Program-made: the position numbers and the translations under genes
Part shown: positions 48 to 33,925 of the stretch, piece by piece
How positions within the stretch are numbered: position 1 is the first letter of the stretch
How the letters are laid out: each line of letters opens with the position of its first letter
Virus record (IMG/VR): IMGVR_UViG_3300044700_000691
Location: 1-64,000 of that record
Direction: 5' to 3' (one strand)
Length of the DNA stretch: 64,000 nucleotides
Notes under the pieces: model-generated
Told to the model about the DNA's origin: nothing
What the model saw: only the letters and a program-made list of their open reading frames with translations
Database searches by the model: none

Positions 48-66
48 GTAAATATAAGTATTTTAT
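48..66 (-). promoter_or_regulatory. early promoter cassette, partial copy
   Basis: minus strand TATATTTAC box. Confidence 0.6.
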
Positions 67-314
67 TGATAAAATTGTATTTCGTCCACTATAAAAAAAT
101 GCTCCAAAATTAATACGTTTCTCAGATTGTTGAATTCCACAAAATCATCAAGATCATCAACATCCCATCCATCGGCCTCTCCTATTTCAGAAAAGAGTTT
201 TAATGACTTACTGATAATATCACCATATGACTCGGGAGACCAGGTATTTCCTATACATTCAACGACTTTTAACAGTCCAACCTCGTTGCTTTCGTTTTTT
301 ATTTGAAAAATCAT
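63..314 (-). CDS. hypothetical early protein, acidic, 83 aa
   Basis: ORF directly downstream of cassette 340-406. Confidence 0.75.
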   Translation of the reverse strand: MIFQIKNESNEVGLLKVVECIGNTWSPESYGDIISKSLKLFSEIGEADGWDVDDLDDFVEFNNLRNVLILEHFFIVDEIQFYQ

Positions 315-339
315 CTTTATTTGTTTTAATTAGTTATAA

Positions 340-406
340 GTAAATATAATACTTTTATTTGACAGTAAAAAACTTTTTGTTACTTATTTTCAAAAAGTTA
401 TTAACA
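340..406 (-). promoter_or_regulatory. early promoter cassette, full copy
   Basis: minus strand TGTTAATAAC-TTTTTGAAAATAAGT...TTTTTACTGTCAAATAAAAGTAT-TATATTTAC; resembles the Bacteroidota -33/-7 (TTTG/TAnnTTTG) promoter. Confidence 0.8.
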
Positions 407-423
407 CTGTAACTAAGTATAAC

Positions 424-936
424 CTATACCCCGATTGGGGTAAAGGTGTCGAAAAAGTCTACTGATGTCATTGCGGCTTTTACTCTCTCCAAACAAACAG
501 GTCCCATTGCAGTATTGATACTTTCTGGATGGGTTAATGGCAAGCCACATTTGCAGCAGGTCCCATTATGAAATAGACCTACTCGGGTTCCCAAAATTGT
601 AGGGTCCTTAATAGCAGCTACCACCCAGCCTAGAGCCTGTGCCAGTCGCGAGCTTGGTGTAACTCCTTTGCCCAATACATAGGTTAAGGGCTCGGCAAAT
701 AGGGTACCTGCAAACTGATGACCGCTACGCCCGTCCGCCAATAGAGAGATATTGACGTAGTAAATAGGCAGCATCTTTTTGCGATCCTCCTTGTCACGTA
801 ACTGCTTGATACGCACGTTCATGTGGGTAAGTTGTTCATTATTGCGGAAGGTGATGTTGGCTCTACCTGCAAGCGCCAAGGTTGGTAGTGACTTTGGATT
901 AAGGTTTGGCCGAGCTGCTCTGATTTGATTTGTCAT
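424..936 (-). CDS. DUF6011-like zinc-ribbon protein
   Basis: C-terminal CCKCGLPLTHPESINTAMGPVC motif. Confidence 0.7.
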   Translation of the reverse strand: MTNQIRAARPNLNPKSLPTLALAGRANITFRNNEQLTHMNVRIKQLRDKEDRKKMLPIYYVNISLLADGRSGHQFAGTLFAEPLTYVLGKGVTPSSRLAQALGWVVAAIKDPTILGTRVGLFHNGTCCKCGLPLTHPESINTAMGPVCLERVKAAMTSVDFFDTFTPIGV

Positions 937-959
937 ATGTAGTTAAGTTAATTGGTTAA

Positions 960-1026
960 GTAAATATAAGCAATTAGTTTGACAATAAAAAACTTTTATA
1001 CACTTATTTTCAAAAAGTTATTAACA
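960..1026 (-). promoter_or_regulatory. early promoter cassette, full copy
   Basis: near-identical to 340-406. Confidence 0.8.
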
Positions 1027-1118
1027 ATTTTCCTGTAATCCTAGCCAAATATAGAGGTAGGTCGGAGTATACCTCCCGCTTCCTTGTTCAGAACCGTCCC
1101 GTCTTATTGATTGATTGA
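1027..1118 (-). ncRNA. candidate small RNA or empty cassette (promoter with no ORF)
   Basis: full cassette at 1123-1190 points into about 90 nt of GC-richer sequence with only tiny ORFs and a GGAG/CTCC or GAGGTA/TACCTC hairpin. Confidence 0.3.
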
Positions 1119-1122
1119 CATA

Positions 1123-1190
1123 GTAAATATAAACAAAAAACCCCAAACTAAAAAATCTGGGGTCAATTATTTTTCAAAAAGTTATTAACA
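1123..1190 (-). promoter_or_regulatory. early promoter cassette with embedded terminator hairpin
   Basis: TATATTTAC and TGTTAATAAC boxes; minus strand stem CCCCAGA/TTTGGGG followed by T6. Confidence 0.75.
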
Positions 1191-1216
1191 AAAAAAGGGA
1201 GAACTTTCGCTCTCCC
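1191..1216 (-). terminator. intrinsic terminator
   Basis: minus strand GGGAGAGC-GAAA-GTTCTCCC followed by a T run. Confidence 0.75.
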
Positions 1217-1239
1217 AATTCTATCAATTAACTACTAAA

Positions 1240-1656
1240 CTAAAACTCACTTCGTAATACATCGAGTCTGGATTTTTCGTCGACGGTTAGTCCACTTAAA
1301 CCTTTAACTGAAATCAATTCCAATAAGTCATCCATTGTTAAGTGTGATGTGGAACTTGTTGGTGATGAGGTTTCACCTAAACCAAAAACTGATTTACGAA
1401 TTTTTTCTGGAAGATTAATATCGAAATCTTCTAAGGTCGTAACCATAAATGGAACTTCATTTAACTCACTATCGTTTTTAAAACGATCCCGAATTTGAGT
1501 TGGTGTCAACTCACTTTTAAAAACTGAGATAATAATTCCAGGAAGTGGAAGAATTTTTGCGTCAGTTTTGTTTAAAATAATTTCAGACATTAATACTTCT
1601 GAAACTCTTGGGTCTGGTCCCATTCCGAAACGGGCGAACACGATTTGATTTGACAT
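1240..1656 (-). CDS. hypothetical protein with DUF6576-like C-terminal motif
   Basis: MDDLLELISVKGLSGLTVDEKSRL resembles the Bacteroidota DxILDKIxxxGxxSLTxxEK motif. Confidence 0.6.
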   Translation of the reverse strand: MSNQIVFARFGMGPDPRVSEVLMSEIILNKTDAKILPLPGIIISVFKSELTPTQIRDRFKNDSELNEVPFMVTTLEDFDINLPEKIRKSVFGLGETSSPTSSTSHLTMDDLLELISVKGLSGLTVDEKSRLDVLRSEF

Positions 1657-1681
1657 ATGTTATTTTTTAATTGGTTATAGA

Positions 1682-1748
1682 GTAAATATAATACTTTTAT
1701 TTGACAGTAAAAAACTTTTTATTAATTATTTTCATAAAGTTATTAACA
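1682..1748 (-). promoter_or_regulatory. early promoter cassette, full copy
   Basis: repeat match. Confidence 0.8.
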
Positions 1749-1760
1749 ATTTGGGAGAGA

Positions 1761-1979
1761 CTAATCTTCTCTCTCCCATTCTTCAATGATCTCCGCACCA
1801 TAAAGTTCGCCACGACTTCCAAATCCAAATGTTCCTTCAAGAGTTGGACGACATAGGATTACTTTGAAGTTATATTCGTCTTCTTTGCAACACTCATTAA
1901 ACTCCGCTTGGGCTTTGTCTAGGTTTTCAGTTAAGAAATAGGAATCACCATCGTGATTAAGATTAATAATTACATACAT
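1761..1979 (-). CDS. hypothetical early protein, 72 aa
   Basis: ORF downstream of a cassette. Confidence 0.75.
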   Translation of the reverse strand: MYVIINLNHDGDSYFLTENLDKAQAEFNECCKEDEYNFKVILCRPTLEGTFGFGSRGELYGAEIIEEWERED

Positions 1980-2009
1980 ACATTTAAGGGTTTAGTTGAT
2001 TAATATAAA

Positions 2010-2066
2010 GCTAATATAATAAAAATAATTGACAGTAAAAAATATTTGAGCACGTATTTTCAAAAA
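2010..2066 (-). promoter_or_regulatory. early promoter cassette (TATATTAGC variant)
   Basis: repeat match, lacks the TGTTAATAA box. Confidence 0.7.
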
Positions 2067-2067
2067 A

Positions 2068-2223
2068 TTATGGGACTATAAAATCCCATAGCTCTTCGCC
2101 CGTAGGCTTGCCATCTCGCAGGATCTCGTAATTTGGATCCATGCCGCTGGACATGACATCATCGATAAGTTCTTGTAGAGTTGAGAATTCTTTCTTGTAG
2201 TAGCTGCAATCTAGTGTCCACAT
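2068..2223 (-). CDS. small hypothetical protein, 51 aa (MWTLDCSYYKKEF...WDFIVP), not in the ORF track
   Basis: translated by hand; sits directly behind cassette 2250-2317. Confidence 0.75.
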   Translation of the reverse strand: MWTLDCSYYKKEFSTLQELIDDVMSSGMDPNYEILRDGKPTGEELWDFIVP

Positions 2224-2249
2224 ATCTTCTTTAGTTAATTGGTTATAGA

Positions 2250-2317
2250 GCTAATATAATAAAAAATCCTCAAAGAAAAAAATCTTTGAGGACTTATTTT
2301 AAGAAAAGTTATTAACA
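2250..2317 (-). promoter_or_regulatory. early promoter cassette with embedded terminator hairpin
   Basis: stem TCCTCAAAG/CTTTGAGGA plus T6 on the minus strand, between the two boxes. Confidence 0.75.
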
Positions 2318-2321
2318 ATTC

Positions 2322-2549
2322 TTATAGTTCCATAACCAACTGGGCTAGCGTGCTAGCAAGCCAGTCTTGAATCTCCTTAAAAGCAGAGTCTGCTTCTTCT
2401 TGAGTGCCAAACGAAATGGTCTTAATTTGACGAGTAGTTTCCGGAAATGTAATACGGATTACCGCATTATTCAATTGGATTTCTTCGCCACCACCTAGGC
2501 AATATATTACCTTTGTGTCTTCTCTGTGTAGTACTAGTGTCTTTACCAT
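2322..2549 (-). CDS. hypothetical protein, 75 aa
   Basis: ORF translationally coupled to the upstream gene. Confidence 0.7.
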   Translation of the reverse strand: MVKTLVLHREDTKVIYCLGGGEEIQLNNAVIRITFPETTRQIKTISFGTQEEADSAFKEIQDWLASTLAQLVMEL

Positions 2550-2908
2550 TACTTAGTTGTGTTAGTTGTATTGGACTTAGGTGTAGTCTTTGCAGCTGGC
2601 TTGCCAGCCTTCTGCGCAGGTTTTGTAGAGGGCTTAGACGTCTTTGCAGTTGTCTTAGTTGTCTCTTTAGCAGGCTTCGTTGAATCTTTCTTACGAGAGT
2701 TCTTCTCAGCTTTAGTAGGGGCAGGCTTTACAGTTTCTTCGGCTACGATTGGATAAGGTTTTTTAACCTCTTCAACTTTTGCTTTAGGAATCTCATTAAC
2801 AACAGTTGACCATTTCTCGAATGAATCTACTACTTGCTTGTCCTTAACTACTTCTTGTTCTGCTTTACCTAACAATCCTTTAAACCAGTTTGCGATCGCT
2901 TTAAACAT
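2549..2908 (-). CDS. protein with Lys/Thr/Ala/Pro-rich basic tail (possible DNA binding)
   Basis: low-complexity KPAKETTKTTAKTSKP tail. Confidence 0.7.
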   Translation of the reverse strand: MFKAIANWFKGLLGKAEQEVVKDKQVVDSFEKWSTVVNEIPKAKVEEVKKPYPIVAEETVKPAPTKAEKNSRKKDSTKPAKETTKTTAKTSKPSTKPAQKAGKPAAKTTPKSNTTNTTK

Positions 2909-2972
2909 GAATATAAGTATTATTTTGATATCTTTTATTAGAATAAGCCAAAAGGTTTTAATACTAACCCAG

Positions 2973-3000
2973 AACAGGAGGTCGCTGGGACACTCCTGTT
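2973..3000. other. intergenic hairpin without U-tract
   Basis: AACAGGAG-GTC...GAC-A-CTCCTGTT inverted repeat upstream of 2549..2908. Confidence 0.45.
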
Positions 3001-3032
3001 GGATTATATTTCTTGATATAATAGAAACTATA

Positions 3033-3335
3033 TTACTGTGCTAAGAGTGCTGTCAACTCAATGAGAGCTTGCTCTGTAACAATATGGTTGTAACCACCAA
3101 TATGCCATTCAATCATTTCGTCTTTCCCAATTGGTCTATACTCTTTCCAATCATAAATTGTAAATATCTGTCCGTCTTCCAACTCGCACCTCCAGTCGAA
3201 GTTTACTTTATCCTCGCCAGTATTATCGCTATGCTGGGGCTCACCAATTGCTTGGGCTAATTGGTTATAAGAACATGTAATTACAGTGTCGTGGAACGAG
3301 GTTCCTGATCCAGGGTTAAAGCTTAGTTTTGCCAT
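3033..3335 (-). CDS. hypothetical phage protein, 100 aa
   Basis: ORF in leftward operon. Confidence 0.8.
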   Translation of the reverse strand: MAKLSFNPGSGTSFHDTVITCSYNQLAQAIGEPQHSDNTGEDKVNFDWRCELEDGQIFTIYDWKEYRPIGKDEMIEWHIGGYNHIVTEQALIELTALLAQ

Positions 3336-3356
3336 AGTTATATTTGATTTAATTGA

Positions 3357-3596
3357 TTACTTTAATTTCTTATACCATTCTAATATACCCACCATTTTTT
3401 GAATCTTTAGCTCTAGACCAAAGTTGCTTCCAACGAGACGACCTACTTTCATAGGATAATATCCCATCCCGTCTTTACCAGTTTCGTCCTTATCGATTTC
3501 TTTAATGGAGTTAGAGTGTTCCTCTAATTGAGTAATAAAGGAATCTATATCCTTCATTAATTCGTCATAGGCTCTCGCCTTTTCGTGTATCTTCAT
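3357..3596 (-). CDS. hypothetical protein, 79 aa
   Basis: ORF in operon. Confidence 0.75.
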   Translation of the reverse strand: MKIHEKARAYDELMKDIDSFITQLEEHSNSIKEIDKDETGKDGMGYYPMKVGRLVGSNFGLELKIQKMVGILEWYKKLK

Positions 3597-3602
3597 ATCT
3601 TT

Positions 3603-3914
3603 TTATTTTAATAGTTTAGTTGGTATTCCTACATTATAGACTAAGTTTGCAAAGAATTTTAATCCTTTGTATGTTGTATAATCTGCGCGACCAATCGCAC
3701 CCATAAGATCGTTAGCAACAAAGCTCTGTACAAAGCTTCCACCTTCATATCCTACCTTCCACTTAGTGCAGAGAATCGAGGTTCCTATATCAATAATATG
3801 AACTCTTTCACTTTCCGATAGGTCGACGAGTTCTGTCCATTGAGCATTATTATCAAGGTATATTTCTACCTCTGCCCTTACGATGTTAATCTGTTCTTCT
3901 CTTGTCATTTTCAT
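3603..3914 (-). CDS. hypothetical protein, 103 aa
   Basis: ORF in operon. Confidence 0.75.
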   Translation of the reverse strand: MKMTREEQINIVRAEVEIYLDNNAQWTELVDLSESERVHIIDIGTSILCTKWKVGYEGGSFVQSFVANDLMGAIGRADYTTYKGLKFFANLVYNVGIPTKLLK

Positions 3915-3930
3915 ATTGATTTGTTTATTA

Positions 3931-4212
3931 TTAAATTGCCTCAGTCAAACTAAGTGGAGCGATTATAATGCCTAATTTACCAGCTTCTTTTAAATGTATT
4001 TTGGTGCGGTTGATTTTAACAACTTCGAACGTTTTACCCGCAGCTTTAGGATGGTTAACTCTAACCGACATCCCAATTATTAAAGAACGTTTTACCATAC
4101 GCGCTTCTTGTCTGCGACGTAATTTAATAATGTCAATAAGATCTGCATTTAACTTTGAAAGGTCAGCAGTAGAAAGGGTGTTGATTTGAGAAAGGATTTG
4201 TGAGTAGTTCAT
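3931..4212 (-). CDS. hypothetical basic protein, 93 aa (SH3-like C-terminal half possible)
   Basis: first gene behind cassette 4239-4306. Confidence 0.75.
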   Translation of the reverse strand: MNYSQILSQINTLSTADLSKLNADLIDIIKLRRRQEARMVKRSLIIGMSVRVNHPKAAGKTFEVVKINRTKIHLKEAGKLGIIIAPLSLTEAI

Positions 4213-4238
4213 ATTATATCTTTGTTAGTTTGTTATAT

Positions 4239-4306
4239 GTAAATATAATAAAAAAACCTGAATTAAAAAAATCCAGGTTCATTTATTTTTAAAAAAGTTA
4301 TTAACA
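4239..4306 (-). promoter_or_regulatory. early promoter cassette with embedded terminator hairpin
   Basis: stem AACCTGGA/TTCAGGTT plus T run on the minus strand. Confidence 0.75.
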
Positions 4307-4308
4307 TT

Positions 4309-4452
4309 TTATTCTTCAGGTTTTCCATCTGGTCCCCATCTCTCTTTTTGTTCTTCTTCAAGATTATCAAGTTCTTTATCAAGATCCTTTAACCATTGGT
4401 CTAGCTCTTGTTGCGCAGCTGAGTCTGCCCCTTCTTTTTCTTTTGGATCCAT
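4309..4452 (-). CDS. small acidic protein, 47 aa (MDPKEKEGADS...), not in the ORF track
   Basis: hand translation; fills an operon gap. Confidence 0.6.
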   Translation of the reverse strand: MDPKEKEGADSAAQQELDQWLKDLDKELDNLEEEQKERWGPDGKPEE

Positions 4453-4461
4453 ACATCGAGA

Positions 4462-4626
4462 TTATTTTTTGCTTACTGCCCATATTTGTAAGAATGCCTT
4501 TAGCGGCAGATTCTTACGGTTTGCGAAGTGTTTAGCGGCGGCCAATCTGCCAGTTGTAAAAACTTTATCAACAGCCTCGGTTGATTTATCTAGTTTTGAG
4601 TAATAGTAATAGGTTCCTACTGACAT
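4462..4626 (-). CDS. small basic protein, 54 aa (MSVGTYYYYSK...), not in the ORF track
   Basis: hand translation; fills an operon gap. Confidence 0.65.
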   Translation of the reverse strand: MSVGTYYYYSKLDKSTEAVDKVFTTGRLAAAKHFANRKNLPLKAFLQIWAVSKK

Positions 4627-4663
4627 GATTCCTGGTTATATTATAGTATTATCTATTATTGTA

Positions 4664-4975
4664 CTATCGATTCGACTGCCGGGTTTCGCCTGTGCGACGA
4701 TTATATGCAAACTTTTCTCTTAGGCCAAGGTCTTCGTAAAGTAATATACCATTATTAAAAGAGAGAGGTTCTTGATTGGGTAATCCTAATCTATACATAC
4801 CTCTATTCTCGCCGGTTGCAGTAAAGAAATTAACCTCGCCTGTTTGAGACATGCAGCAGACCTCTTCTGAATCCCAACCTATAAGTTCATAGTTACCTAA
4901 TACAAACTGGGTTCGGGTCCCGTTGTCGTGCACCACGCTTGCAATACTACCCTGTTCTTCGACATAACTTATCAT
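4664..4975 (-). CDS. hypothetical protein, 103 aa
   Basis: ORF with 4-nt overlap with the upstream gene. Confidence 0.75.
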   Translation of the reverse strand: MISYVEEQGSIASVVHDNGTRTQFVLGNYELIGWDSEEVCCMSQTGEVNFFTATGENRGMYRLGLPNQEPLSFNNGILLYEDLGLREKFAYNRRTGETRQSNR

Positions 4976-5373
4976 AGTTTTCCTCCTTTTAATTGTTTAG
5001 TAAAGTCTTCTGGCTTTATGAATCCATCTTGAAGCATGTCTTCGTAGGCTGCGCCTTTTGCAGACTGCTTGTACATTACCTCGCCTGATTCGCTAAGCGC
5101 TGCATCAATTAATCCAGCGTCTACCATTTCAGAAATAGTATTTCTTATTTGGGCTTTCGCTGCAGAGTCTATCACTGCACTGACCTGCTCTTCAGTCAAG
5201 TTAGGATTTACAAAAGGAACTATATCATCCTTCATATTTTCCAGTGCAGCATTAGTTATATCAAGTAAAAGAGTTTCTTGATCTAGATCCCCTGCCTTAT
5301 CATTCTCTATAATTACTTCTGTTACTTCTAGCGCATAGCCTTTAGCTATCCATTGTTTAATTTGATCTGACAT
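4972..5373 (-). CDS. hypothetical acidic protein, 133 aa
   Basis: ORF downstream of the sigma gene. Confidence 0.75.
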   Translation of the reverse strand: MSDQIKQWIAKGYALEVTEVIIENDKAGDLDQETLLLDITNAALENMKDDIVPFVNPNLTEEQVSAVIDSAAKAQIRNTISEMVDAGLIDAALSESGEVMYKQSAKGAAYEDMLQDGFIKPEDFTKQLKGGKL

Positions 5374-5389
5374 TTTCTTTAGGATTTAA

Positions 5390-6106
5390 TTAGTTAAAAG
5401 TTTTACGTAATTTGTGACGAGCTAATCGAAGAGTTTGATTTACTTTAGAAACTTCCATTCCTAATTCATCAGCAGTTTCTTTAGCAGAGCGAGCTTCGCC
5501 TCTGTCGATTCCATAGAAAGTCTCGATTACCTTGCGATCATGGTCATTTAATTTGCTTAACACTGCGGCAACTTGTTGCTCAACGCTTTGTTCTTCAAAT
5601 GGATCCACGAATTCTGCACGAAGAATAAGATCGCCTAAGGTATTAGAACCATCTTCGCCGATTGGCTTGTCTAATCTAATATTAGTTAAGTTGATATCTT
5701 CGCCAGCCATTTTGCGCTTGTAGATATCGTATTCCTGATTCATAGGTAATCGTACAGTACGACCATACTCGCCTAGTGCAGTATTTAACTTCTTACGAAT
5801 CCAGAACTGTGCATAGGTAATAAACTTAACATCTTTTTCTGGAGTAAAACGCTTTGCAGCTTCGATAAGACCGCAGTTAGCTTCCATAATAAGATCGTCG
5901 ACAGGCAAGCCTAGTCCAATAAACTTATTCGCTAAGCTGACAGCGAACTTAAGGTTAGCATTTACTAGGGAGTGCATTGCAGCCTCGTCGCCGGCCTGAA
6001 TCCGGATAGCTAATTCTTTTTCCGCAGCCTTGCTTAAAGGCTTCGCCAGTTTGTCAATACTTTTAAAGTATGCTGGTAAGTTGGTTGATGCTTCAAATTT
6101 TGCCAT
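5390..6106 (-). CDS. RNA polymerase sigma-70 family factor (RpoD/RpoS-like, no region 1.1)
   Basis: region 1.2 (YFKSIDK..LSKAAEKELA), region 2 (LVNANLKFAVSLA, DDLIMEANCGLIEAAKRF, KFITYAQFWIR) and region 4 HTH. Confidence 0.92.
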   Translation of the reverse strand: MAKFEASTNLPAYFKSIDKLAKPLSKAAEKELAIRIQAGDEAAMHSLVNANLKFAVSLANKFIGLGLPVDDLIMEANCGLIEAAKRFTPEKDVKFITYAQFWIRKKLNTALGEYGRTVRLPMNQEYDIYKRKMAGEDINLTNIRLDKPIGEDGSNTLGDLILRAEFVDPFEEQSVEQQVAAVLSKLNDHDRKVIETFYGIDRGEARSAKETADELGMEVSKVNQTLRLARHKLRKTFN

Positions 6107-6137
6107 AGTTATTTTTTTAGATTGATTGATTTATAAT

Positions 6138-6194
6138 TTAAATATAATACTTTTATTTGACATAGTACAATGTTTTTTAATAAAGTTATTAACA
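6138..6194 (-). promoter_or_regulatory. early promoter cassette driving the sigma gene
   Basis: TATATTTAA box; TGTTAATAAC about 10 bp closer than in most copies. Confidence 0.75.
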
Positions 6195-6225
6195 TTGTCT
6201 ACTAGGGAGTGGCCCTAGCCGGGGT

Positions 6226-6618
6226 CTAGCCAAAGATTATATCTTCAAAGAACACGCTTTGTAGTACAACATCCGCAGTGCATGCATCGTCGTTTTCGTT
6301 TATCATATCTAGGAGATGGCTGGCTGGGGTCAAGGCCACGCGTTCATGTACATCCGCTAGGGTTACAGATCTAGTGTATTCGCCTTCACAGCCAATATCT
6401 ACTAGGGTAATCTTGTTACCATCACGTAAGATCTGCATTAAGACATCTTCAAAACAAGGGCTAGCACCGCCTGCTTTTAGTTTTGCAGCTGCGGTTTGGT
6501 ATTCCTTGTCGTCGAAATCCAGTTCTAAATCATAACCGCTAGTTACGTAGCCTAAGCCGTTACACATTGCGTTAAAGAATATTTCTTCCGCTTCATTTTT
6601 TTCTAAGAGTATTTTCAT
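6226..6618 (-). CDS. hypothetical protein, 130 aa
   Basis: ORF behind a cassette. Confidence 0.8.
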   Translation of the reverse strand: MKILLEKNEAEEIFFNAMCNGLGYVTSGYDLELDFDDKEYQTAAAKLKAGGASPCFEDVLMQILRDGNKITLVDIGCEGEYTRSVTLADVHERVALTPASHLLDMINENDDACTADVVLQSVFFEDIIFG

Positions 6619-9479: not shown

Positions 9480-9501
9480 CAAGGCTTAAGAGATTCTCTA
9501 C

Positions 9502-9810
9502 TTAGACAAGTTGAGAATTCTTGATACGACCGCGGGTCATATCGAAAGCTTTGTTTACAATCTTTGCATTTTGGTACAAGCCACCGATAACTTCACTTGT
9601 GTAGTTAGGCGAGAATCCAGTACGTGCAGCTACTTTCACTAAGTCGCCTTGACGTAGACGAGAGTTAATAACTGCTAATTTTGCTGTGTAAGGCAATTTG
9701 CGATAGGTCATGCCTATCTTGGTTTGGTTTGCTGTGTTTGACATTGTAGTCGGTTTGGTTTTAAATTTTGCAGTAAATGCTGCAAATGCTTTCTTTATAG
9801 ACATAGACAT
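9502..9810 (-). CDS. small basic helix-turn-helix DNA-binding protein
   Basis: GDLVKVAARTGFSPNYTSEVIGG HTH-like segment; true start may be further in. Confidence 0.6.
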   Translation of the reverse strand: MSMSIKKAFAAFTAKFKTKPTTMSNTANQTKIGMTYRKLPYTAKLAVINSRLRQGDLVKVAARTGFSPNYTSEVIGGLYQNAKIVNKAFDMTRGRIKNSQLV

Positions 9811-9834
9811 TTTATATTGTTTAGATTATTATAC

Positions 9835-10062
9835 CTACCCCTTTGGCTTATTGGCATCTGCGATAGCACTCCTAATTGCACCAGTTCCCATTACTGTCTT
9901 GCCGATAACCATCCAGCCCATTGCGGAGAGCCAGGTAATTTCGTGTAGACCTTGATCAGGGCCAATGCTATTCCATATTACCTTAAGAAAAAAGGCTTCG
10001 AGCATAAAGCTACAGACACCGACAAATAGTTTGTAAATTGCTTCTTTTGTTTTAGTTGACAT
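9835..10062 (-). CDS. small membrane protein, 75 aa
   Basis: hydrophobic segments. Confidence 0.7.
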   Translation of the reverse strand: MSTKTKEAIYKLFVGVCSFMLEAFFLKVIWNSIGPDQGLHEITWLSAMGWMVIGKTVMGTGAIRSAIADANKPKG

Positions 10063-10127
10063 ATTATATCCAGTTTAAGATTTTAAATAATACTTTCGCG
10101 ACTATAAAGAACACGATTATCTTTAGG

Positions 10128-10158
10128 GCTAATATACCCAATTTCTCGATAGTTGACA
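10128..10158 (-). promoter_or_regulatory. degenerate early promoter cassette
   Basis: TGTCAA...TATATTAGC. Confidence 0.45.
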
Positions 10159-10167
10159 AGAGGCTGG

Positions 10168-10470
10168 TCATATGCTGCTGTTGAAAAATAGCTTTACCTC
10201 TTTACGACCTCTAGTATTACCAAGCTTTACCTCGCTCTCGGTAATTTCTATTTCAATTACCCTGACCCCATTTGCAAAATGGTGCTTATCAAATCTGAGT
10301 CTCCCTTCGTTGGTAAATCTCTCGACAACTTCGCCACCTCTTAGCCTGCTAAACTCGGCCTCGCTAAGGGTTAACTCTTGCCCAATACTCCAGTGGACAG
10401 GCTTTACACTACGACCTGACTCTTCGCGAATAGGTTCGGTAACGGTTAATTTAAATTCTTTGTGTATCAT
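10168..10470 (-). CDS. hypothetical protein, 100 aa
   Basis: ORF behind cassette 10492. Confidence 0.7.
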   Translation of the reverse strand: MIHKEFKLTVTEPIREESGRSVKPVHWSIGQELTLSEAEFSRLRGGEVVERFTNEGRLRFDKHHFANGVRVIEIEITESEVKLGNTRGRKEVKLFFNSSI

Positions 10471-10491
10471 CGTATATCATTTAGTTATAGA

Positions 10492-10538
10492 GTAAATATA
10501 ACCAATTAACTTGACACCCAAAAATAAAGTTATTAACA
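10492..10538 (-). promoter_or_regulatory. early promoter cassette
   Basis: TATATTTAC, with TGTTAATAAC about 20 bp closer than in most copies. Confidence 0.75.
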
Positions 10539-10718
10539 ATTATCCCAGCTAGTCGGGCTATCTTCAGCTGTTACCTGCCAAAACTGGCCAAGGTTATCGC
10601 GCACAGTTAGCACGTCTGGTGCTACTACTTCTACAATACCCGTGATAGGGGCTTCTAGCTCTTCGAATTTCTGTAACCATTGGATAGTATCTCCCGGTTT
10701 AAAGTCTTGTATCTGCAT
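10533..10718 (-). CDS. small SH3/KOW-like protein, 61 aa
   Basis: FKPGDTIQW...GIVEVV pattern. Confidence 0.65.
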   Translation of the reverse strand: MQIQDFKPGDTIQWLQKFEELEAPITGIVEVVAPDVLTVRDNLGQFWQVTAEDSPTSWDNC

Positions 10719-10721
10719 ATG

Positions 10722-11027
10722 TTATAGTTTGTTTATAGCTGCTTCGCGTTTAACCCGATAGAATAACTCAGCAGCCCATTCATATTCTTCCCTAGCAACC
10801 GCCACGTCGAGCGCAGTAATACAGGCATGGTATAGAGCATGTAATAAGTATTCAAGATACTCTGCACTCCAATCCTCTTCGCCTGCTGTTTTACCTAGGT
10901 CTTCGACTATCTTGCCTAGACAGTGGCGTATCGCCTGCTGGTCTCGACCTACTCCTTCCAGCCCAGTAAGGATTCGGTCTTTAATTAGTGTAGATAAGTA
11001 TTCAGGCATCTCCTTTTGGTTTAGCAT
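10722..11027 (-). CDS. hypothetical protein with UVR-like motif
   Basis: AVAREEYEWAAEL. Confidence 0.7.
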   Translation of the reverse strand: MLNQKEMPEYLSTLIKDRILTGLEGVGRDQQAIRHCLGKIVEDLGKTAGEEDWSAEYLEYLLHALYHACITALDVAVAREEYEWAAELFYRVKREAAINKL

Positions 11028-11033
11028 TATAGT

Positions 11034-11041
11034 TATTATAC
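11034..11041 (-). promoter_or_regulatory. middle-class promoter box GTATAATA (representative; also at 9827, 18326, 19157, 33941, 38341, 40537, 41136, 47538, 48458, 63979)
   Basis: exact 8-mer just upstream of minus-strand non-structural genes. Confidence 0.6.
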
Positions 11042-11094
11042 TAGGCTAGGGGTATAGGTTTACCTGCGCAGAGTAGGTACAGGGCTAGTGCAAT

Positions 11095-11492
11095 ACCTCC
11101 TGCTGGACCGGCTGGAGACCTGCCTGGAGCTGCTGGTCAGGCTAGCCCAGGAGGCTATATAATACCTACCCAGGACCGGTCTGGTACTGCTCCTGGCTGC
11201 CCTGGGGACCGTCCTGGCAGCTGTCTCCAGGTGACTCCTGGGGTACACCAGGACAGGTCCAGACTGCTCCTGGGTGACCCTGGGGAGCTGTCCAGGGGCT
11301 GCCCCGGGGCCTATCCCTGGTATAAGTTTTTGTAGCCAGGGGGAAGCAAGCATTTTTACTTTTTTCTCTTGTCTCCCCGGCTTGGCTAGTGGTCCAGACC
11401 TTTTTGCCTAGATTCATTTATCCAGGGGCTTTTCCTCGGGGCATTTCTACTGGTGGCGAATTTCCCCTGGCTTGGGGGCTGTTGTCCAGGTC
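11095..11492. repeat. GC-rich non-coding array of 17 CCWGG motifs at the strand switch
   Basis: CCWGG at 11123, 11147, 11170, 11192, 11201, 11213, 11227, 11237, 11248, 11269, 11279, 11292, 11316, 11336, 11422, 11466, 11486. Confidence 0.8.
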
Positions 11493-11500
11493 TTTTGCTA

Positions 11501-11507
11501 ATAAATA
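11501..11507 (+). promoter_or_regulatory. late-class promoter ATAAATA (representative; also + at 14318, 18367, 19195, 24669, 25548, 28288, 33961 and - at 13964, 32561, 33122, 42451, 46450, 50213, 53610, 57118, 63909)
   Basis: resembles T4 late TATAAATA; precedes structural and leader-bearing genes. Confidence 0.65.
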
Positions 11508-11532
11508 TCTTTATAACTATAACAATATTATT

Positions 11533-11958
11533 ATGAACAGGATTAAAAGATTTAGTGAGTATCTAGTAGAGGCAGTAGCCTTAGATCAATTGGCTACTCA
11601 ATTAGGTGGTACCGTGGAACCTATCGAGGGGGTAACAGACTGGTCAGCAGTTAGAGGTTATCTAGATATTAACCGTGAAAAACTTAAGACCAGCTTAGAA
11701 AAGGCAACTGGAGATAAGATAACTGCCATGGTAGTTATTAAGGTTACTGATATCTATGCTGAAGACAAGAGGGACGGGGTAACTCCTGATCCAGACTGGT
11801 TAGGTGCAGATCCAATTGTAGACGATGCAACTCCAGATCTACAAGAAATGGTTAAGGTAGTTATTTCAGCAATACAGCAGAGTCTTGCTAAATCCGATAC
11901 AGCAACCCTAGCTAAGTTTAGTACAGCAGGTAAAGGCATCAAAACAAGTAGATATTAA
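11533..11958 (+). CDS. putative capsid-internal protein (leader MNRIKRFSEYLVE), 141 aa
   Basis: start moved from 11389 to the ATG after the late promoter; capsid-targeting-sequence (CTS)-like leader. Confidence 0.75.
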   Translation: MNRIKRFSEYLVEAVALDQLATQLGGTVEPIEGVTDWSAVRGYLDINREKLKTSLEKATGDKITAMVVIKVTDIYAEDKRDGVTPDPDWLGADPIVDDATPDLQEMVKVVISAIQQSLAKSDTATLAKFSTAGKGIKTSRY

Positions 11959-11961
11959 TCT

Positions 11962-12612
11962 ATGAAACATATCAGACTATACAAAGATTTTATTACCGAA
12001 GAGGTCCAGTCTGGTGTTGTGCACTGCAGTGGTAAAAGCTGTAACTGGAGTTGGAATCTAGCGGATGGCTTGGATGGCGGCGAAACCAATCCCTATCTAT
12101 GTCACAAGTGCTGGCATGACAATACCCCTGCTATTACCGAATCTGCGGATCCTTTCTGGACCCAATATGTTAGACTTGTTGATCTAGGTATGATTGATCT
12201 AGAGGATTGGAGCAAGATTAAAGATGATGTAGTATTGCTAGTTAAGGAGCGGTTAGCCAGTCACTACCCTAATTTAGATGTAGAAAAACTGGCATTTGAC
12301 GAAATCAGGATCCACCAGCAGGGTAAAGGCGGGCGCGATCCTTATTATAGTGTCTATATTGATAAGGGCGTTAACTATAGTTATAAGGTATGGAATTGCA
12401 GATTGGTAATTCGTTTTCAAAAGGCAGCCGGTCGACTTGATAGTAGTCAGCTTATTACGGTACCTGACTATTTCTGGGAAAGACCAATTGGTGGGTATCA
12501 ATGGATACCAAGCACGGTTGCACAGAGTAGGTGGATAGCAGACGAAATTATCAAGTGGATGGACAAGGTCTTTGTACCATTTATCGGTGTTGAAATAGAA
12601 GAAACCAACTAA
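11962..12612 (+). CDS. putative capsid-internal protein with N-terminal Cys cluster (zinc ribbon)
   Basis: leader MKHIRLYKDFITE; CxxxxC...CxxC; RLVDLGM motif. Confidence 0.75.
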   Translation: MKHIRLYKDFITEEVQSGVVHCSGKSCNWSWNLADGLDGGETNPYLCHKCWHDNTPAITESADPFWTQYVRLVDLGMIDLEDWSKIKDDVVLLVKERLASHYPNLDVEKLAFDEIRIHQQGKGGRDPYYSVYIDKGVNYSYKVWNCRLVIRFQKAAGRLDSSQLITVPDYFWERPIGGYQWIPSTVAQSRWIADEIIKWMDKVFVPFIGVEIEETN

Positions 12613-12614
12613 CT

Positions 12615-13187
12615 ATGAAATATTTAAAACCATACCGCCTATTTGAATCCGCTGAAGAGATTGCCGCAGCTAGGCGCATGTTGGCACTAGGCTTAATAGA
12701 ACCCGAGGATTTTAAACAGAAATTACAGGAGCTTGGTTTGGATAAACAGTATCGTAGCGAATTTGTTGCCGCCCTCAAGACCCTATTTGCGGATCTTGGG
12801 CTAGAGTGGCGGGATTGGGCAACAGGCCGCCAGGCGGATAATGGTACAGTCGTGCTTAAAATTAGCCCAGCTGATGCAGCCGAAATTCTCTTTACTGCTG
12901 ACTTGCCTAAGGGCTTAAGCCCTGCTCAAGAGGCACGCTATGCAAAGATAAAAGGGGAGCTGCAGCAGTGGCAGCGTCAAATGGAGATGGAGACCTCATT
13001 GAGCTCTAGGTTTGAATACTGGATTTTCCCAGGTTCTCTACGTAACTCTGGTCGAATTGGCCAACCAACCTCTAACCGTCAGGTTATATTCGATGGCTTA
13101 ACTGAGCCGGGTACAGCCCTGGCCAGATTTATGTACCAAGTTGCACTTGATGCCCATGGTCGTAGTTGGCGCTGGGGTAGGCGCTAG
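12615..13187 (+). CDS. putative capsid-internal protein
   Basis: leader MKYLKPYRLFE; RMLALGL motif. Confidence 0.75.
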   Translation: MKYLKPYRLFESAEEIAAARRMLALGLIEPEDFKQKLQELGLDKQYRSEFVAALKTLFADLGLEWRDWATGRQADNGTVVLKISPADAAEILFTADLPKGLSPAQEARYAKIKGELQQWQRQMEMETSLSSRFEYWIFPGSLRNSGRIGQPTSNRQVIFDGLTEPGTALARFMYQVALDAHGRSWRWGRR

Positions 13188-13253
13188 GCCTCACCACTCT
13201 TAACCCCAACCCCCTTGCGCGGGCGCACTCGGCGGGGTCCAGGAATACTGCAT

Positions 13254-13278
13254 AAAAAAAGAGGCTAGGCGCCTCTTT
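13254..13278. terminator. terminator between convergent genes
   Basis: AAAGAGGC/GCCTCTTT stem with an A run on the left. Confidence 0.65.
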
Positions 13279-13305
13279 AGTAATTTAAGATATAGGTGAG
13301 TCTAG

Positions 13306-33124: not shown

Positions 33125-33925
33125 TTATTGTTGTAGGCTTGGTACCCAATGAGTAGTTCTGCCGTCTGCTGTTTTTTCTCTAATTACTGTATTTCCATGA
33201 GGATCTTCCCGTTTGCCATATACTTCAAATTCAAACACAAAGTCGCCAGTTTCGCCTGTCACCTGTTGATAGTTTCTAATACTTGCTCCACCTTGCTTAT
33301 AGGATGACCTACTTATTAGCTTAGCATAATCCCATAATAAAGAAACGTCATTATCAGTAAGGTCTCTAACTAATCTATGTGGGGAGATCTTTGTTCTGTA
33401 TAACATTTCGCATTTAATATAGTTTCCTATTCCTGCAAAAAGGCGCTGATCCATTAGTGCCTCAACTATAGTTTTGTTTGGAACCCGTTCAAACGATCTT
33501 ATTGTATCATACATAGTTGCACTTTGGTCATTGAGTGCATCAACCCCTAGGGTTTTTAATTTTGCATCCAATTCAACCTTAGTTGCAAATTTAAGCGTAC
33601 CAAATCGGCGCTGGTCAACAAAAAATAGCTCTAGGCCATCATCAAATACTAATTTAATATGAGAATGCGGCTTTTCATAGATTGACCAAAAGCCGCTCAT
33701 ACCTAGAGTAATCCAGATAGACATGCCCTCTTCTAATTCCAGCCAGATGAATTTACCCTTAACTCCGCCTCCAACTACCTCCAGGGGCAGCCCCAGGGTC
33801 TCCAGGCCGCTTGGGGGAGTCTTTAGGAAGCGCCCTCCAAGTATTTCTACGTTAACTAATTTTTTATTAATGCAGTGGTTTCTTAAACCTTCATATACTC
33901 GTCTGCACTCAGGTCCTTCTGGCAT
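33125..33925 (-). CDS. Fpg/Nei family DNA glycosylase/AP lyase
   Basis: N-terminal MPEGPE, KGK, DQRRFG, H2TH LMDQRLFAGIGNY, C-terminal GRTTHWVP without zinc-finger cysteines. Confidence 0.92.
   Translation of the reverse strand: MPEGPECRRVYEGLRNHCINKKLVNVEILGGRFLKTPPSGLETLGLPLEVVGGGVKGKFIWLELEEGMSIWITLGMSGFWSIYEKPHSHIKLVFDDGLELFFVDQRRFGTLKFATKVELDAKLKTLGVDALNDQSATMYDTIRSFERVPNKTIVEALMDQRLFAGIGNYIKCEMLYRTKISPHRLVRDLTDNDVSLLWDYAKLISRSSYKQGGASIRNYQQVTGETGDFVFEFEVYGKREDPHGNTVIREKTADGRTTHWVPSLQQ

What the first reader, a model, noticed from the sequence alone, without database searches (positions are those of the whole stretch)
11095..11492. GC-rich array of 17 CCWGG sites with ~11-bp spacing at the early/late strand switch
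Seen: in an AT-rich genome, a ~400-bp non-coding block holds 17 CCWGG. In the core (11192-11316), including near-matches at 11259 and about 11304, they recur every 9-14 bp, roughly one per helical turn, often as CTGYY-CCWGG units in both orientations. It lies exactly between the divergent early and late blocks. Known: CCWGG is the Dcm/EcoRII site; phased repeats are typical of iterons, centromere-like sites and packaging/injection signals. Inference: replication origin, genome terminus/pac or injection-stop signal, a nucleoprotein wrapping site, or a methylation/restriction decoy.
Basis: partly seen in the sequence, partly recalled or inferred. Interest (0 to 1): 0.72.

Follow-up and report, generated by a model that had tools for sequence, protein, structure and literature searches.

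The report
Phased CCNGG box array in phage
A single-copy stretch of 14 short CCNGG boxes, spaced about 11.2 bp apart, sits just upstream of the first early gene in a clade of uncultured freshwater T4-like jumbo phages; it is most likely a docking array for a DNA-binding protein that controls early transcription and possibly replication start, but its binder and function are untested.

Summary
There are 17 CCWGG in 11095-11492, against 1.2 expected from local composition and 3.9 from a dinucleotide model. No other such cluster exists in the 216.8-kb record.

The block is not an artefact: an independent DNA assembly reproduces it and 21 related contigs assemble through it. It is not coding: no frame is open in all relatives.

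The core (11170-11320) holds 14 CCNGG boxes over about 146 bp, with a period of 11.2 bp rather than 10.5. Across 22 relatives the C and G positions almost never change. The central base flips A<->T freely, and half of the spacer columns vary. There is no indel in 210 columns.

The array recurs in distant phage families, always single-copy and always just upstream of, and in the same polarity as, a homolog of the 101-aa gene 10722-11027. There the central base can also be C or G.

Two metatranscriptomes cover both flanking genes but not the core. A small AT segment is inverted between families. Both points favour a double-stranded-DNA element over an RNA.

Best reading: a cooperative, iteron-like protein-binding array controlling the leftward early promoters. 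An early replication origin is the main rival or an additional role. Terminus/pac, centromere and Dcm/EcoRII readings failed their tests.

The parts
11170..11320 (-). Core array: 14 CCNGG boxes (12 CCWGG, plus CCAGA at 11259 and CCCGG/CCGGG at 11303/4). Spacings are 22, 9, 12, 14, 10, 11, 11, 10, 10, 13, 11, 13. That makes about 13 intervals of 11.2 bp, or about 7 double units of 22.4 bp. Unit polarity follows the minus strand, which is the sense strand of the 101-aa gene.
   Evidence: C/G columns vary in 7 of 52, W columns in 7 of 13, spacer columns in 43 of 88. No indel in 210 columns across 22 relatives.
11095..11155 (-). Promoter-proximal, loosely conserved continuation of the array: CCTGG at 11123, CCAGG at 11147, and GCTGG/TCAGG half-boxes. 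The sequence is only 47-62% conserved, but boxes are retained in the relatives.
11156..11165 (-). AT island inside the array. It is -10-like on both strands: minus-strand TATTAT at 11159-11164 (proposed distal leftward promoter P2) and plus-strand TATAAT at 11158-11163. The minus-strand pattern CAG-TATnnT is conserved and matches the proximal promoter of the distant homologs (L028, L029).
   Evidence: RNA contig X13 reaches from the 101-aa gene up to 11127.
11035..11063 (-). Proximal leftward promoter P1: -10 TATAAT at 11035-11040 and -35 GTAAAC at 11058-11063, with degenerate boxes (CCTAG CCTAG; CCAGG in relatives) in the spacer. The -10 ends 7 nt before the ATG at 11027, so the mRNA would be near-leaderless.
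   Evidence: the pattern AAACC-N-CCWGG-N5-TATAAT is kept in L029, L030 and L028. RNA contig X14 ends at 11013.
11064..11071 (.). Invariant 8-bp palindrome CTGCGCAG just upstream of the P1 -35 element. Possible separate operator.
11302..11309 (.). CCCCGGGG palindrome closing the array on the side distal to the gene. It is extended to a 15-bp perfect palindrome in L032/L048.
11321..11335 (.). 15-bp AT-rich near-palindrome (CTAYA-A/T run-TATAG type) flanked by CCTGG and CCAGG. Its central A/T run is inverted between the window family and the L030/L044/L045 family.
11350..11369 (-). Two phased A-tracts on the minus strand (T-tracts on the plus strand). Nearly invariant in 22 relatives and recognisable in distant families as GGAAAAAnAGGAAAAAG. 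Candidate bend, UP-like element or unwinding segment.
11370..11497 (.). Distal conserved block with further boxes at 11422, 11466 and 11486. It includes a hairpin plus T-run at 11469-11497 on the plus strand; in L018, L022 and L023 the hairpin is kept with different stems.
11500..11507 (+). Late-type promoter word AATAAATA, 25 nt upstream of the 141-aa gene.
   Evidence: A[AT]TAAATA lies upstream of 26 genes, including the endolysin and many genes of the structural region; the prohead protease upstream shows the exact T4 late word TATAAATA.
10722..11027 (-). 101-aa acidic four-helix protein, first gene of the leftward block. It is the only gene whose presence tracks the array.
   Evidence: present in 7 of 7 array-bearing loci and 0 of 7 array-less loci.
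9502..9810 (-). 102-aa basic protein (pI 10.8) with an HTH-like segment, in the same operon. It is 50-71% identical in distant array-bearing phages. Candidate array binder by inference only.
   Evidence: Its family also occurs in array-less phages.
11533..11958 (+). 141-aa acidic protein of unknown function, the divergent neighbour in the window's own family only.
   Evidence: It is not linked to the array in the distant families.

Best explanation
The block is the core of a roughly 500-bp, single-copy control module that acts as double-stranded DNA. Fourteen CCNGG boxes lie head-to-tail every 11.2 bp over about 146 bp.

I propose the following mechanism. A small DNA-binding protein reads little more than the four G:C pairs of each box. 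It polymerises cooperatively along the array into one complex of fixed size. Because 11.2 bp exceeds the 10.5-bp helical repeat, successive boxes rotate by about 24 degrees, so the 14 boxes make close to one turn around the helix. The DNA must therefore be wrapped or untwisted in the complex.

The complex sits directly upstream of, and replaces the -35 region of, the distal leftward promoter P2. A box also lies in the spacer of the proximal promoter P1. The complex would thereby set the firing or shut-off of the early operon that starts with the 101-aa gene. The best candidate binder is the conserved basic HTH-like 102-aa protein of that operon, which would make the circuit autoregulatory.

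Shown: the array itself, its selection pattern, its single-copy status, its linkage to and polarity with the 101-aa gene, and the promoter-like elements.

Inferred: that a protein binds at all, which protein it is, and the regulatory outcome.
For: - Selection acts on the box, not the sequence. C/G columns vary in 7 of 52 against 43 of 88 spacer columns (Fisher p = 2e-5). The central base varies in 7 of 13 columns, mostly by A<->T flips that keep the palindrome.
- Spacing and copy number are frozen: no indel in 210 columns across 22 relatives. The core spans 145-147 bp in three families.
- The period is 11.15-11.55 bp in 10 arrays from distinct families.
- The array is single-copy in the 216-kb record and in a 253-kb, 94%-complete relative.
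- It always lies upstream of, and in the same polarity as, the 101-aa homolog: 7 of 7 array-bearing loci against 0 of 7 array-less loci.
- In L028 the array abuts the -35/-10 of that gene. A CCWGG-N5-TATAAT arrangement is shared by P1, P2 and the distant promoters.
- RNA contigs cover both flanking genes but not 11128-11578 in two metatranscriptomes, and one reaches from the gene up to 11127, which fits a start at P2.
- The AT segment is inverted between families, and the A<->T flips are not compensated in the predicted stems. Both argue for DNA rather than RNA.
- The flanks of the boxes carry 0.3 bit or less, which fits avidity-driven cooperative binding.
Against: - No binder is identified.
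- The adjacent 101-aa protein is acidic and a generic four-helix bundle.
- The HTH-like protein could not be modelled with confidence (pLDDT 54), and its family also occurs in phages without the array.
- In L032/L048/L049 the array lies 0.5-1 kb from the gene, and in L032/L048 (the same sequence) an early-type promoter lies between them. Direct control of that gene's promoter therefore cannot be universal.
- One metatranscriptome (X17) has a contig across the whole region.
- The helical phasing is not statistically demonstrable in the window's own copy.
Confidence: 0.45

Rival explanations
1. Iteron-type early replication origin. The 14 boxes would act as seven ~22-bp iterons bound by an initiator. 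The adjacent A-tracts and AT segment would serve as the bend and unwinding element, and the early promoters would provide transcriptional activation or a primer. This may coexist with promoter control, as it does in iteron plasmids.
For: - The array is single-copy.
- In L049 and L044 it resolves into ~23-bp double units.
- An AT-rich segment and phased A-tracts lie next to the array.
- It sits at a strand switch and at a local minimum of cumulative GC skew in both the 216-kb and the 253-kb genomes.
- The phage is T4-like. T4 oriE carries evenly spaced 12-nt repeats, lies near a strand switch and depends on an early promoter (PMC3016281).
Against: - No initiator-like protein is encoded next to the array.
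- The GC skew follows gene orientation, so it is not independent evidence.
- The T4 oriE repeats lie inside gene 5, and their role is itself unproven.
- No replication data exist for this phage.
Confidence: 0.27
2. Structured non-coding RNA or long 5' leader. It would be transcribed rightward from the plus-strand -10 at 11158-11163 to the hairpin and T-run at 11497, or leftward as a leader of the early operon. It could act, for example, as a sponge carrying repeated protein-binding motifs.
For: - The region is GC-rich in an AT-rich genome.
- Folding z-scores are -3.5 and -3.6 on the two strands.
- A terminator-like hairpin is conserved with different stems.
- Non-coding conservation exceeds that of the flanking proteins.
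- RNA run X17 has a contig across the region.
Against: - No Rfam match at E <= 1.
- Of 124 predicted pairs, 78 are invariant, 6 show compensatory change and 21 are broken.
- The A<->T flips are uncompensated.
- Palindromic boxes inflate folding scores by themselves.
- Two RNA runs cover both flanking genes but not the core.
- The AT segment is inverted between families.
Confidence: 0.08
3. Packaging (pac) site, genome terminus, injection-stop signal or partition centromere.
For: The array is single-copy and repeat-rich. Arrays with an 11-12-bp period are typical of type II/III centromeres such as R1 parC and tubC (own knowledge).
Against: - Assemblies run through the array, and contig ends of relatives scatter from 0.3 to 200 kb away.
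- TerL lies 48 kb away.
- No tubulin, ParM, ParB or ParA domain was found in the 216 kb.
Confidence: 0.07
4. Methylation-sensing cluster or restriction-related element built on the Dcm/EcoRII word CCWGG, analogous to the GATC clusters of oriC or P1 pac.
For: The box is palindromic and its central W flips freely. Some array-less relatives are about 5-fold depleted in CCNGG, which suggests that restriction against this word exists among hosts of this phage group.
Against: - No methyltransferase, EcoRII or Vsr domain was found in the phage.
- CCWGG is at its Markov expectation elsewhere in the genome.
- CCSGG occupies array positions in relatives: 8 of 19 in L030 and 8 of 24 in L032.
- The unit polarity and the fixed spacing are not explained by this reading.
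Confidence: 0.05
5. Non-functional GC-rich minisatellite, or the remnant of a Pro/Gly-rich (collagen-like) coding repeat.
For: CCWGG reads as Pro-Gly, and spurious ORFs of 83-116 aa are called in the region.
Against: - No frame is open in all 22 relatives, and substitutions show no 3-base periodicity (28/16/28).
- The copy number is frozen and the boxes are strongly conserved across families whose proteins share only about 40% identity.
Confidence: 0.02

Closest known systems
Iteron arrays of plasmid and phage origins (e.g. R6K gamma ori with seven tandem 22-bp iterons; lambda ori)
   Same: Both are tandem, same-polarity repeats covering about 150 bp (7 x 22.4 bp here). Both lie next to AT-rich or bent DNA and directly upstream of a promoter and gene. 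Both are single-copy.
   Different: The box here is only CCNGG, with uninformative flanks. No Rep-like initiator is encoded next to it. Replication function is untested.
T4 oriE 12-nt 'iterons' (PMC3016281)
   Same: The phage lineage is T4-like. Both are evenly spaced short direct repeats near a transcriptional strand switch and an early promoter, and the role of both is unknown.
   Different: The T4 repeats lie inside the coding sequence of gene 5, with repEA/repEB antisense. Here the array is non-coding, has a different sequence, and is tied to an unrelated 101-aa gene.
Type II/III partition centromeres (R1 parC: ten 11-bp repeats flanking the par promoter; tubC 12-bp repeats) and omega/ParG-type operator arrays
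   Same: Both have a 10-12-bp repeat period, cooperative coating by a small protein into a ring or superhelix, an overlap of the array with the operon's own promoter, and autoregulation.
   Different: No ParM, TubZ, ParA or ParB was found. No ribbon-helix-helix protein was recognised. The host is a lytic-type T4-like phage.
phi29 p4/p6 early-late switch nucleoprotein complex
   Same: Both are multimeric protein-DNA complexes between divergent early and late promoters, with a binding period longer than the helical repeat (12 bp per p6 monomer), which implies a right-handed wrap.
   Different: phi29 p6 binding is largely sequence-independent and nucleates at the genome ends. Here there are discrete conserved boxes, and the phage is unrelated.
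Dcm/EcoRII site CCWGG
   Same: The pentanucleotide is the same in the window.
   Different: Relatives use CCSGG as well. No cognate enzyme is encoded, and the word is neither avoided nor enriched elsewhere in the genome.

Membership tests
Iteron-type replication origin | Tandem direct repeats with regular spacing | tested here: met
   There are 14 boxes with a period of 11.2 bp. About 23-bp double units are seen in L049 and L044.
Iteron-type replication origin | Adjacent AT-rich DNA-unwinding element | tested here: inconclusive
   A 15-bp AT segment (11321-11335) and T/A-tracts (11350-11369) are conserved. They are short and interrupted by GC-rich boxes.
Iteron-type replication origin | Cognate initiator gene next to the iterons | tested here: not met
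   The adjacent gene encodes a 101-aa acidic four-helix bundle without Pfam, PHROG or structural matches to Rep proteins.
Iteron-type replication origin | Replication starts here | not testable with these tools
   This needs marker-frequency or 2D-gel data. GC skew is confounded by gene orientation.
Partition centromere (parC/tubC/parS) | Array of 10-12-bp repeats overlapping the operon promoter | tested here: met
Partition centromere (parC/tubC/parS) | Linked partition NTPase (ParM, TubZ or ParA) and adaptor | tested here: not met
   PF00091, PF06406, PF02195 and PF13614 are absent from the 216 kb. The PF06406 search rang in no control genome, so that one result is weak.
pac/cos terminus | Physical DNA ends or contig breaks at the site | tested here: not met
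   A DNA contig spans 9500-12363 with no differences. Twenty-one relatives assemble through the array, and their contig ends scatter.
pac/cos terminus | Proximity to the terminase genes | tested here: not met
   TerL lies at 59279-61237.
Dcm/EcoRII-type methylation or restriction target cluster | Strict CCWGG word | tested here: not met
   CCSGG occupies homologous array positions in L030, L032, L044, L045 and L049.
Dcm/EcoRII-type methylation or restriction target cluster | Cognate methyltransferase or nuclease | tested here: not met
   PF00145, PF01555, PF09217, PF09019 and PF03852 are absent from the phage. The two EcoRII models rang in no control genome. A host enzyme cannot be excluded.
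Dcm/EcoRII-type methylation or restriction target cluster | Boxes are methylated | not testable with these tools
   This needs long-read or bisulfite data.
Structured ncRNA | Match to a described family | tested here: not met
   Rfam 15 gave no hit at E <= 1.
Structured ncRNA | Compensatory base-pair changes | tested here: not met
   Six pairs show compensatory change against 21 with breaks, and the W flips are uncompensated.
Structured ncRNA | Discrete transcript | tested here: inconclusive
   The core is absent from RNA contigs in X13 and X14 and present in X17. Contigs carry no strand and can miss low-coverage RNA.
T4 oriE iterons | Syntenic position inside gene 5 with repEA/repEB | tested here: not met
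   In T4, oriE lies within gene 5. Here the array is in a non-coding region next to unrelated genes.

The most novel reading that the evidence does not exclude
The array may be a fixed-size DNA-wrapping site. Fourteen contacts over about 146 bp at an 11.2-bp period would give roughly one right-handed turn. The site would nucleate a nucleosome-sized particle built by phage proteins that have no known DNA-binding fold: the co-inherited 101-aa four-helix protein, with or without the basic HTH-like protein. The particle would mark the head of the long early transcription block and couple early transcription, local supercoiling and the start of replication. That would be a new kind of phage chromatin or origin particle, not a member of the Rep-iteron or ParR-parC families.
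Probability: 0.1. Interest if true: 0.85.

Novelty: new variant of a known kind. Interest (0 to 1): 0.6.

Why it matters
T4-like jumbo phages are abundant in fresh water, yet almost nothing is known about their cis-acting control DNA. Even in T4, the role of the oriE repeats remains unresolved.

This module is a sharply defined target that can be synthesised: 146 bp, 14 boxes, fixed spacing. It comes with only two co-conserved small proteins to test.

Finding its binder would give three things. It would provide a handle on early-gene control and perhaps on origin firing in an uncultured phage clade. It would provide a natural example of very low-information boxes made specific by phased multiplicity. 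And it would provide a sequence signature, CCNGG repeated 14 times at 11.2 bp upstream of the 101-aa gene family, that locates the start of the early region in metagenomic contigs.

Tried and rejected
- Coding potential: six-frame translation and conserved-ORF tests found no frame open in all relatives. Rejected.
- Rfam scan: nothing.
- RNAalifold and my own pair counts: weak support only.
- Reference phage genomes: megablast and blastn found no match.
- Flanking and nearby small proteins: Pfam and PHROGs gave nothing useful. The protein atlas gave only weak HTH leads.
- 101-aa protein: the fold is confident (pLDDT 87), but PDB, BFVD and VIA-wide searches returned only generic helical bundles.
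- HTH-like protein: the fold has low confidence (pLDDT 54), so I ran no fold search on it. The PDB profile search gave only non-significant Cro-like hits.
- Complex prediction with the HTH-like protein x2 plus array DNA: the job was not folded. The tool gives no verdict for DNA jobs, so this is no evidence either way.
- Domain searches in the phage for methyltransferases, EcoRII, Vsr, tubulin, ParM, ParB and ParA: none found.
- HTH profile against bacterial genomes: none found, so no host clue.
- A different repeated word in the array-less HTH-bearing phages L050-L056: none found within +/-8 kb.
- L026 from the metagenome pattern scan was a chance match and was dropped.
- L004 and L005 matched only 15 residues and were ignored.
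- Literature searches for CCWGG clusters or iterons in T4-like or jumbo phages found no description of this element.

Full report
WHAT IS THERE

The window is bases 1-64000 of a 216,815-bp IMG/VR virus record. The record is linear, estimated 84% complete, and 36% GC.

The region 11095-11492 holds 17 exact CCWGG. Its own base composition predicts 1.2. A first-order Markov model trained on the block itself predicts 3.9 +/- 1.8, with a maximum of 13 in 3000 trials.

No other 400-bp window of the whole record has 5 or more sites. This is also the only island with GC >= 0.6. No other CCNGG chain exists, apart from three sites inside a gene at 33781. Elsewhere in the genome CCWGG is at its Markov expectation.

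NOT AN ARTEFACT, NOT CODING

An independently assembled DNA contig from a public freshwater run spans 9500-12363 without a single difference.

Twenty-one related contigs from other samples assemble through the same element.

Six-frame translation shows Pro/Gly-rich pseudo-ORFs. However, no frame is open in all 22 sequences, and substitutions show no codon periodicity (28/16/28 by phase).

WHAT KIND OF PHAGE

- The record encodes a T4-type large terminase (59279-61237), a gp23-type capsid protein, a prohead protease, a gp46-like SMC ATPase, ribonucleotide reductase, a chaperonin, a ClpB-like ATPase and DNA/RNA ligases. The nearest cultured terminase is Sphingomonas phage PAU, at 33% identity.
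- Only 10% of genes have a Shine-Dalgarno-like word.
- Three upstream motif classes are visible:
  - a T4-early-like TTTAC-N16-TATATT class in the left block;
  - an AG-TATAAT class;
  - a late-type A[AT]TAAATA word upstream of 26 genes, including the endolysin and many genes of the structural region; the prohead protease upstream carries the exact T4 late word TATAAATA.
- The 141-aa gene to the right of the array carries the late word at 11500-11507. The 101-aa gene to the left carries a sigma-70-like promoter.

COMPARATIVE ANATOMY WITHIN THE FAMILY

In 22 relatives the flanking proteins are 51-90% identical to the window's. All of them keep the arrangement 101-aa gene (-) | ~500-bp spacer | 141-aa gene (+), with 16-23 CCWGG in the spacer.

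Within the core:

| Column class | Variable columns |
|---|---|
| C and G of the boxes | 7 of 52 |
| Central base (W) | 7 of 13 |
| Spacer | 43 of 88 |

- The difference between C/G and spacer columns is significant (Fisher p = 2e-5).
- The central-base changes are mostly A<->T flips.
- A 210-column stretch has no indel in any sequence, although it is a tandem repeat.
- The spacing pattern 9, 12, 14, 10, 11, 11, 11, 9, 13 is therefore frozen.
- The box, its number and its spacing are under selection. The spacer letters largely are not.

PERIOD AND POLARITY

- The best period is 11.15-11.55 bp in ten arrays.
- The phase strength at 10.5 bp is only 0.04-0.31.
- In the window's own copy the phasing is not distinguishable from random 9-14-bp packing. 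In L032 it is nearly perfect: spacings of 11, 11, 12, 11, 11, 11, 12, 12, 22, 10, 11, 11 give R = 0.95, reached by 0 of 3000 null trials.
- The core spans 145-147 bp, or 13 intervals, in three families.
- The units are head-to-tail. On the strand of the 101-aa gene they read roughly RGTSAC-CCWGG.
- The pooled flanks carry 0.3 bit or less. Only the base 3' of the box avoids T.
- In L049 and L044 the array resolves into ~23-bp double units. The 14 boxes therefore equal about seven 22.4-bp units.

DEEP CONSERVATION AND LINKAGE

A profile of the 101-aa protein finds 30 distant homologs. Every context I could fetch carries a CCNGG array upstream of the homolog, in the same polarity (L028, L029, L030/31, L032/33).

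- In L028 the array abuts the gene's -35/-10.
- In L030 and L032 about a third of the boxes are CCSGG. The selected word is therefore CCNGG.

A profile of the basic 102-aa HTH-like protein (9502-9810) finds 14 viral loci:

- Seven loci carry an array of 12-16 boxes, 0.9-4.8 kb upstream of the HTH gene (one further array-bearing locus, L043, is the window's own-family relative, with a 21-box chain).
- Seven loci carry none within 8 kb.
- The 101-aa homolog is present in exactly the seven array-bearing loci, always just downstream of the array, and in none of the others.

In a 253-kb, 94%-complete relative the array is again the only CCNGG cluster. It sits at the head of a leftward block of about 83 kb, at a local minimum of cumulative GC skew.

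The flanking non-coding blocks are also recognisable across families whose proteins share only about 40% identity. These blocks are an AGCCNGGGGAAATTC-type block, phased A-tracts, a CCCCGGGG palindrome, and a 15-bp AT near-palindrome.

DNA OR RNA?

- Folding scores are better than shuffles (z about -3.5 on both strands). Palindromic boxes produce that effect by themselves.
- Of 124 predicted pairs, 78 never vary, 6 show compensatory change and 21 are broken. The A<->T flips are not compensated.
- There is no Rfam match.
- Two metatranscriptomes have contigs on both flanking genes but none over 11128-11578. One contig runs from the 101-aa gene up to 11127. A third run has a contig across the whole region.
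- The 15-bp AT segment next to the array has its A-run on opposite strands in different families. That is neutral for a double-stranded site but not for an RNA.
- I conclude that the element most likely works as double-stranded DNA. Transcription through it is not excluded.

PROMOTERS

P1 is conserved across families:
- -10 TATAAT at 11035-11040 on the minus strand;
- -35 GTAAAC at 11058-11063;
- 7 nt from the -10 to the ATG;
- a box (CCAGG in relatives, CCTAG here) 5 nt upstream of the -10.

The AT island inside the array (11156-11165) repeats the same CCWGG-N5-TATnnT arrangement on the minus strand. It lacks a -35 element; boxes lie there instead. I call this P2. The RNA contig that reaches 11127 fits a start near 11150.

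The island is also -10-like on the plus strand. A hairpin plus T-run at 11469-11497 is kept with different stems in some relatives. A rightward transcript therefore cannot be ruled out.

MECHANISM PROPOSED

A protein with low per-site specificity, reading four G:C pairs, binds cooperatively to 14 phased boxes and forms one complex of fixed size.

Because the period exceeds the helical repeat by 0.7 bp, the boxes spiral about once around the helix over the array. A continuous protein array must therefore wrap or untwist the DNA.

The complex lies where an activator or repressor of P2/P1 would lie. It would set early-operon expression. The conserved basic HTH-like protein of that operon is the most economical candidate binder, which would make the circuit autoregulatory.

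These steps are inferred. The anatomy, selection pattern, single-copy status and linkage are shown.

RIVALS

- Iteron-type early origin. This is the main rival and is not exclusive of promoter control. The architecture (AT/A-tract segment, seven double units, promoter, gene) parallels iteron origins. T4 oriE has evenly spaced 12-nt repeats at a strand switch with an early promoter (PMC3016281). However, the T4 repeats lie inside gene 5, no initiator is recognisable here, and GC skew follows gene orientation.
- Terminus or pac: failed, see the membership table.
- Centromere: failed, see the membership table.
- Dcm/EcoRII-related: failed, see the membership table.

VERDICT

This is a real, strongly selected and previously undescribed (as far as my searches reach) cis-element. 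It is a new variant of the iteron/operator-array kind. It has an unusually minimal box, a fixed count of 14, an 11.2-bp period, and strict linkage to one small early gene family. Its binder and function are untested.

Noticed in passing
window 63-6618 (minus strand upstreams): A repeated early-type promoter, TTTTTTAC-TGTCAA-N10-TATTATATTTAC, stands upstream of at least five to seven small genes. The -35 word TTTAC resembles that of T4 early promoters. The same TTTTTTACTGTCAA word occurs in the distant relative L032 at about 3645.
   Followed up: partly
whole record; e.g. window 11500-11507 and upstream of 13941: A late-type word, A[AT]TAAATA (close to T4 TATAAATA), lies within 70 nt upstream of 26 genes, many in the structural region. 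Only 23 of 231 genes have a Shine-Dalgarno-like word, which hints at a host that does not rely on SD pairing, such as Bacteroidota.
   Followed up: partly
L050, L051, L052 (IMG/VR relatives carrying only the HTH-like gene): CCNGG is strongly depleted: 3 sites in 10-16 kb at 34-36% GC, against about 9-15 expected from base composition. This suggests restriction pressure on this word in some hosts of the wider phage group. The window's own genome shows no such depletion.
   Followed up: no
window 33781-33806, inside ORF 33125-33925 (-): This is the only other short CCNGG run in the genome: three sites, 12 and 9 bp apart, inside a coding region. It probably reflects a Pro/Gly-rich peptide stretch.
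   Followed up: no
window about 11960-13200 and relatives L008-L013: The genes right of the 141-aa gene differ between close relatives (products of 111 to 216 aa). The DNA-run contig depth drops from 37 to 19 at about 12,340, which marks a strain-variable region directly next to the conserved module.
   Followed up: no
L047 6860-7010: Upstream of the array in this distant relative, a unit of about 58 bp is directly repeated twice. Each copy contains CCTGG and an ATAAAAGGGCAAATT segment.
   Followed up: no
window 11064-11071: The 8-bp palindrome CTGCGCAG is invariant in all 22 relatives. It lies just upstream of the P1 -35 element and may be a separate operator.
   Followed up: no
window 12800-13300: This is a second, milder GC-rich stretch (0.49-0.55). 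It covers the 3' half of the 190-aa gene and the spacer before the endolysin gene, and holds five CCWGG in 13-14 kb.
   Followed up: no
window 11579-11580: In two RNA runs the contigs of the 141-aa gene begin 47 nt inside the ORF, and one carries adapter sequence at that end. The cause is probably low 5' coverage, but the true transcript start is unmapped.
   Followed up: no
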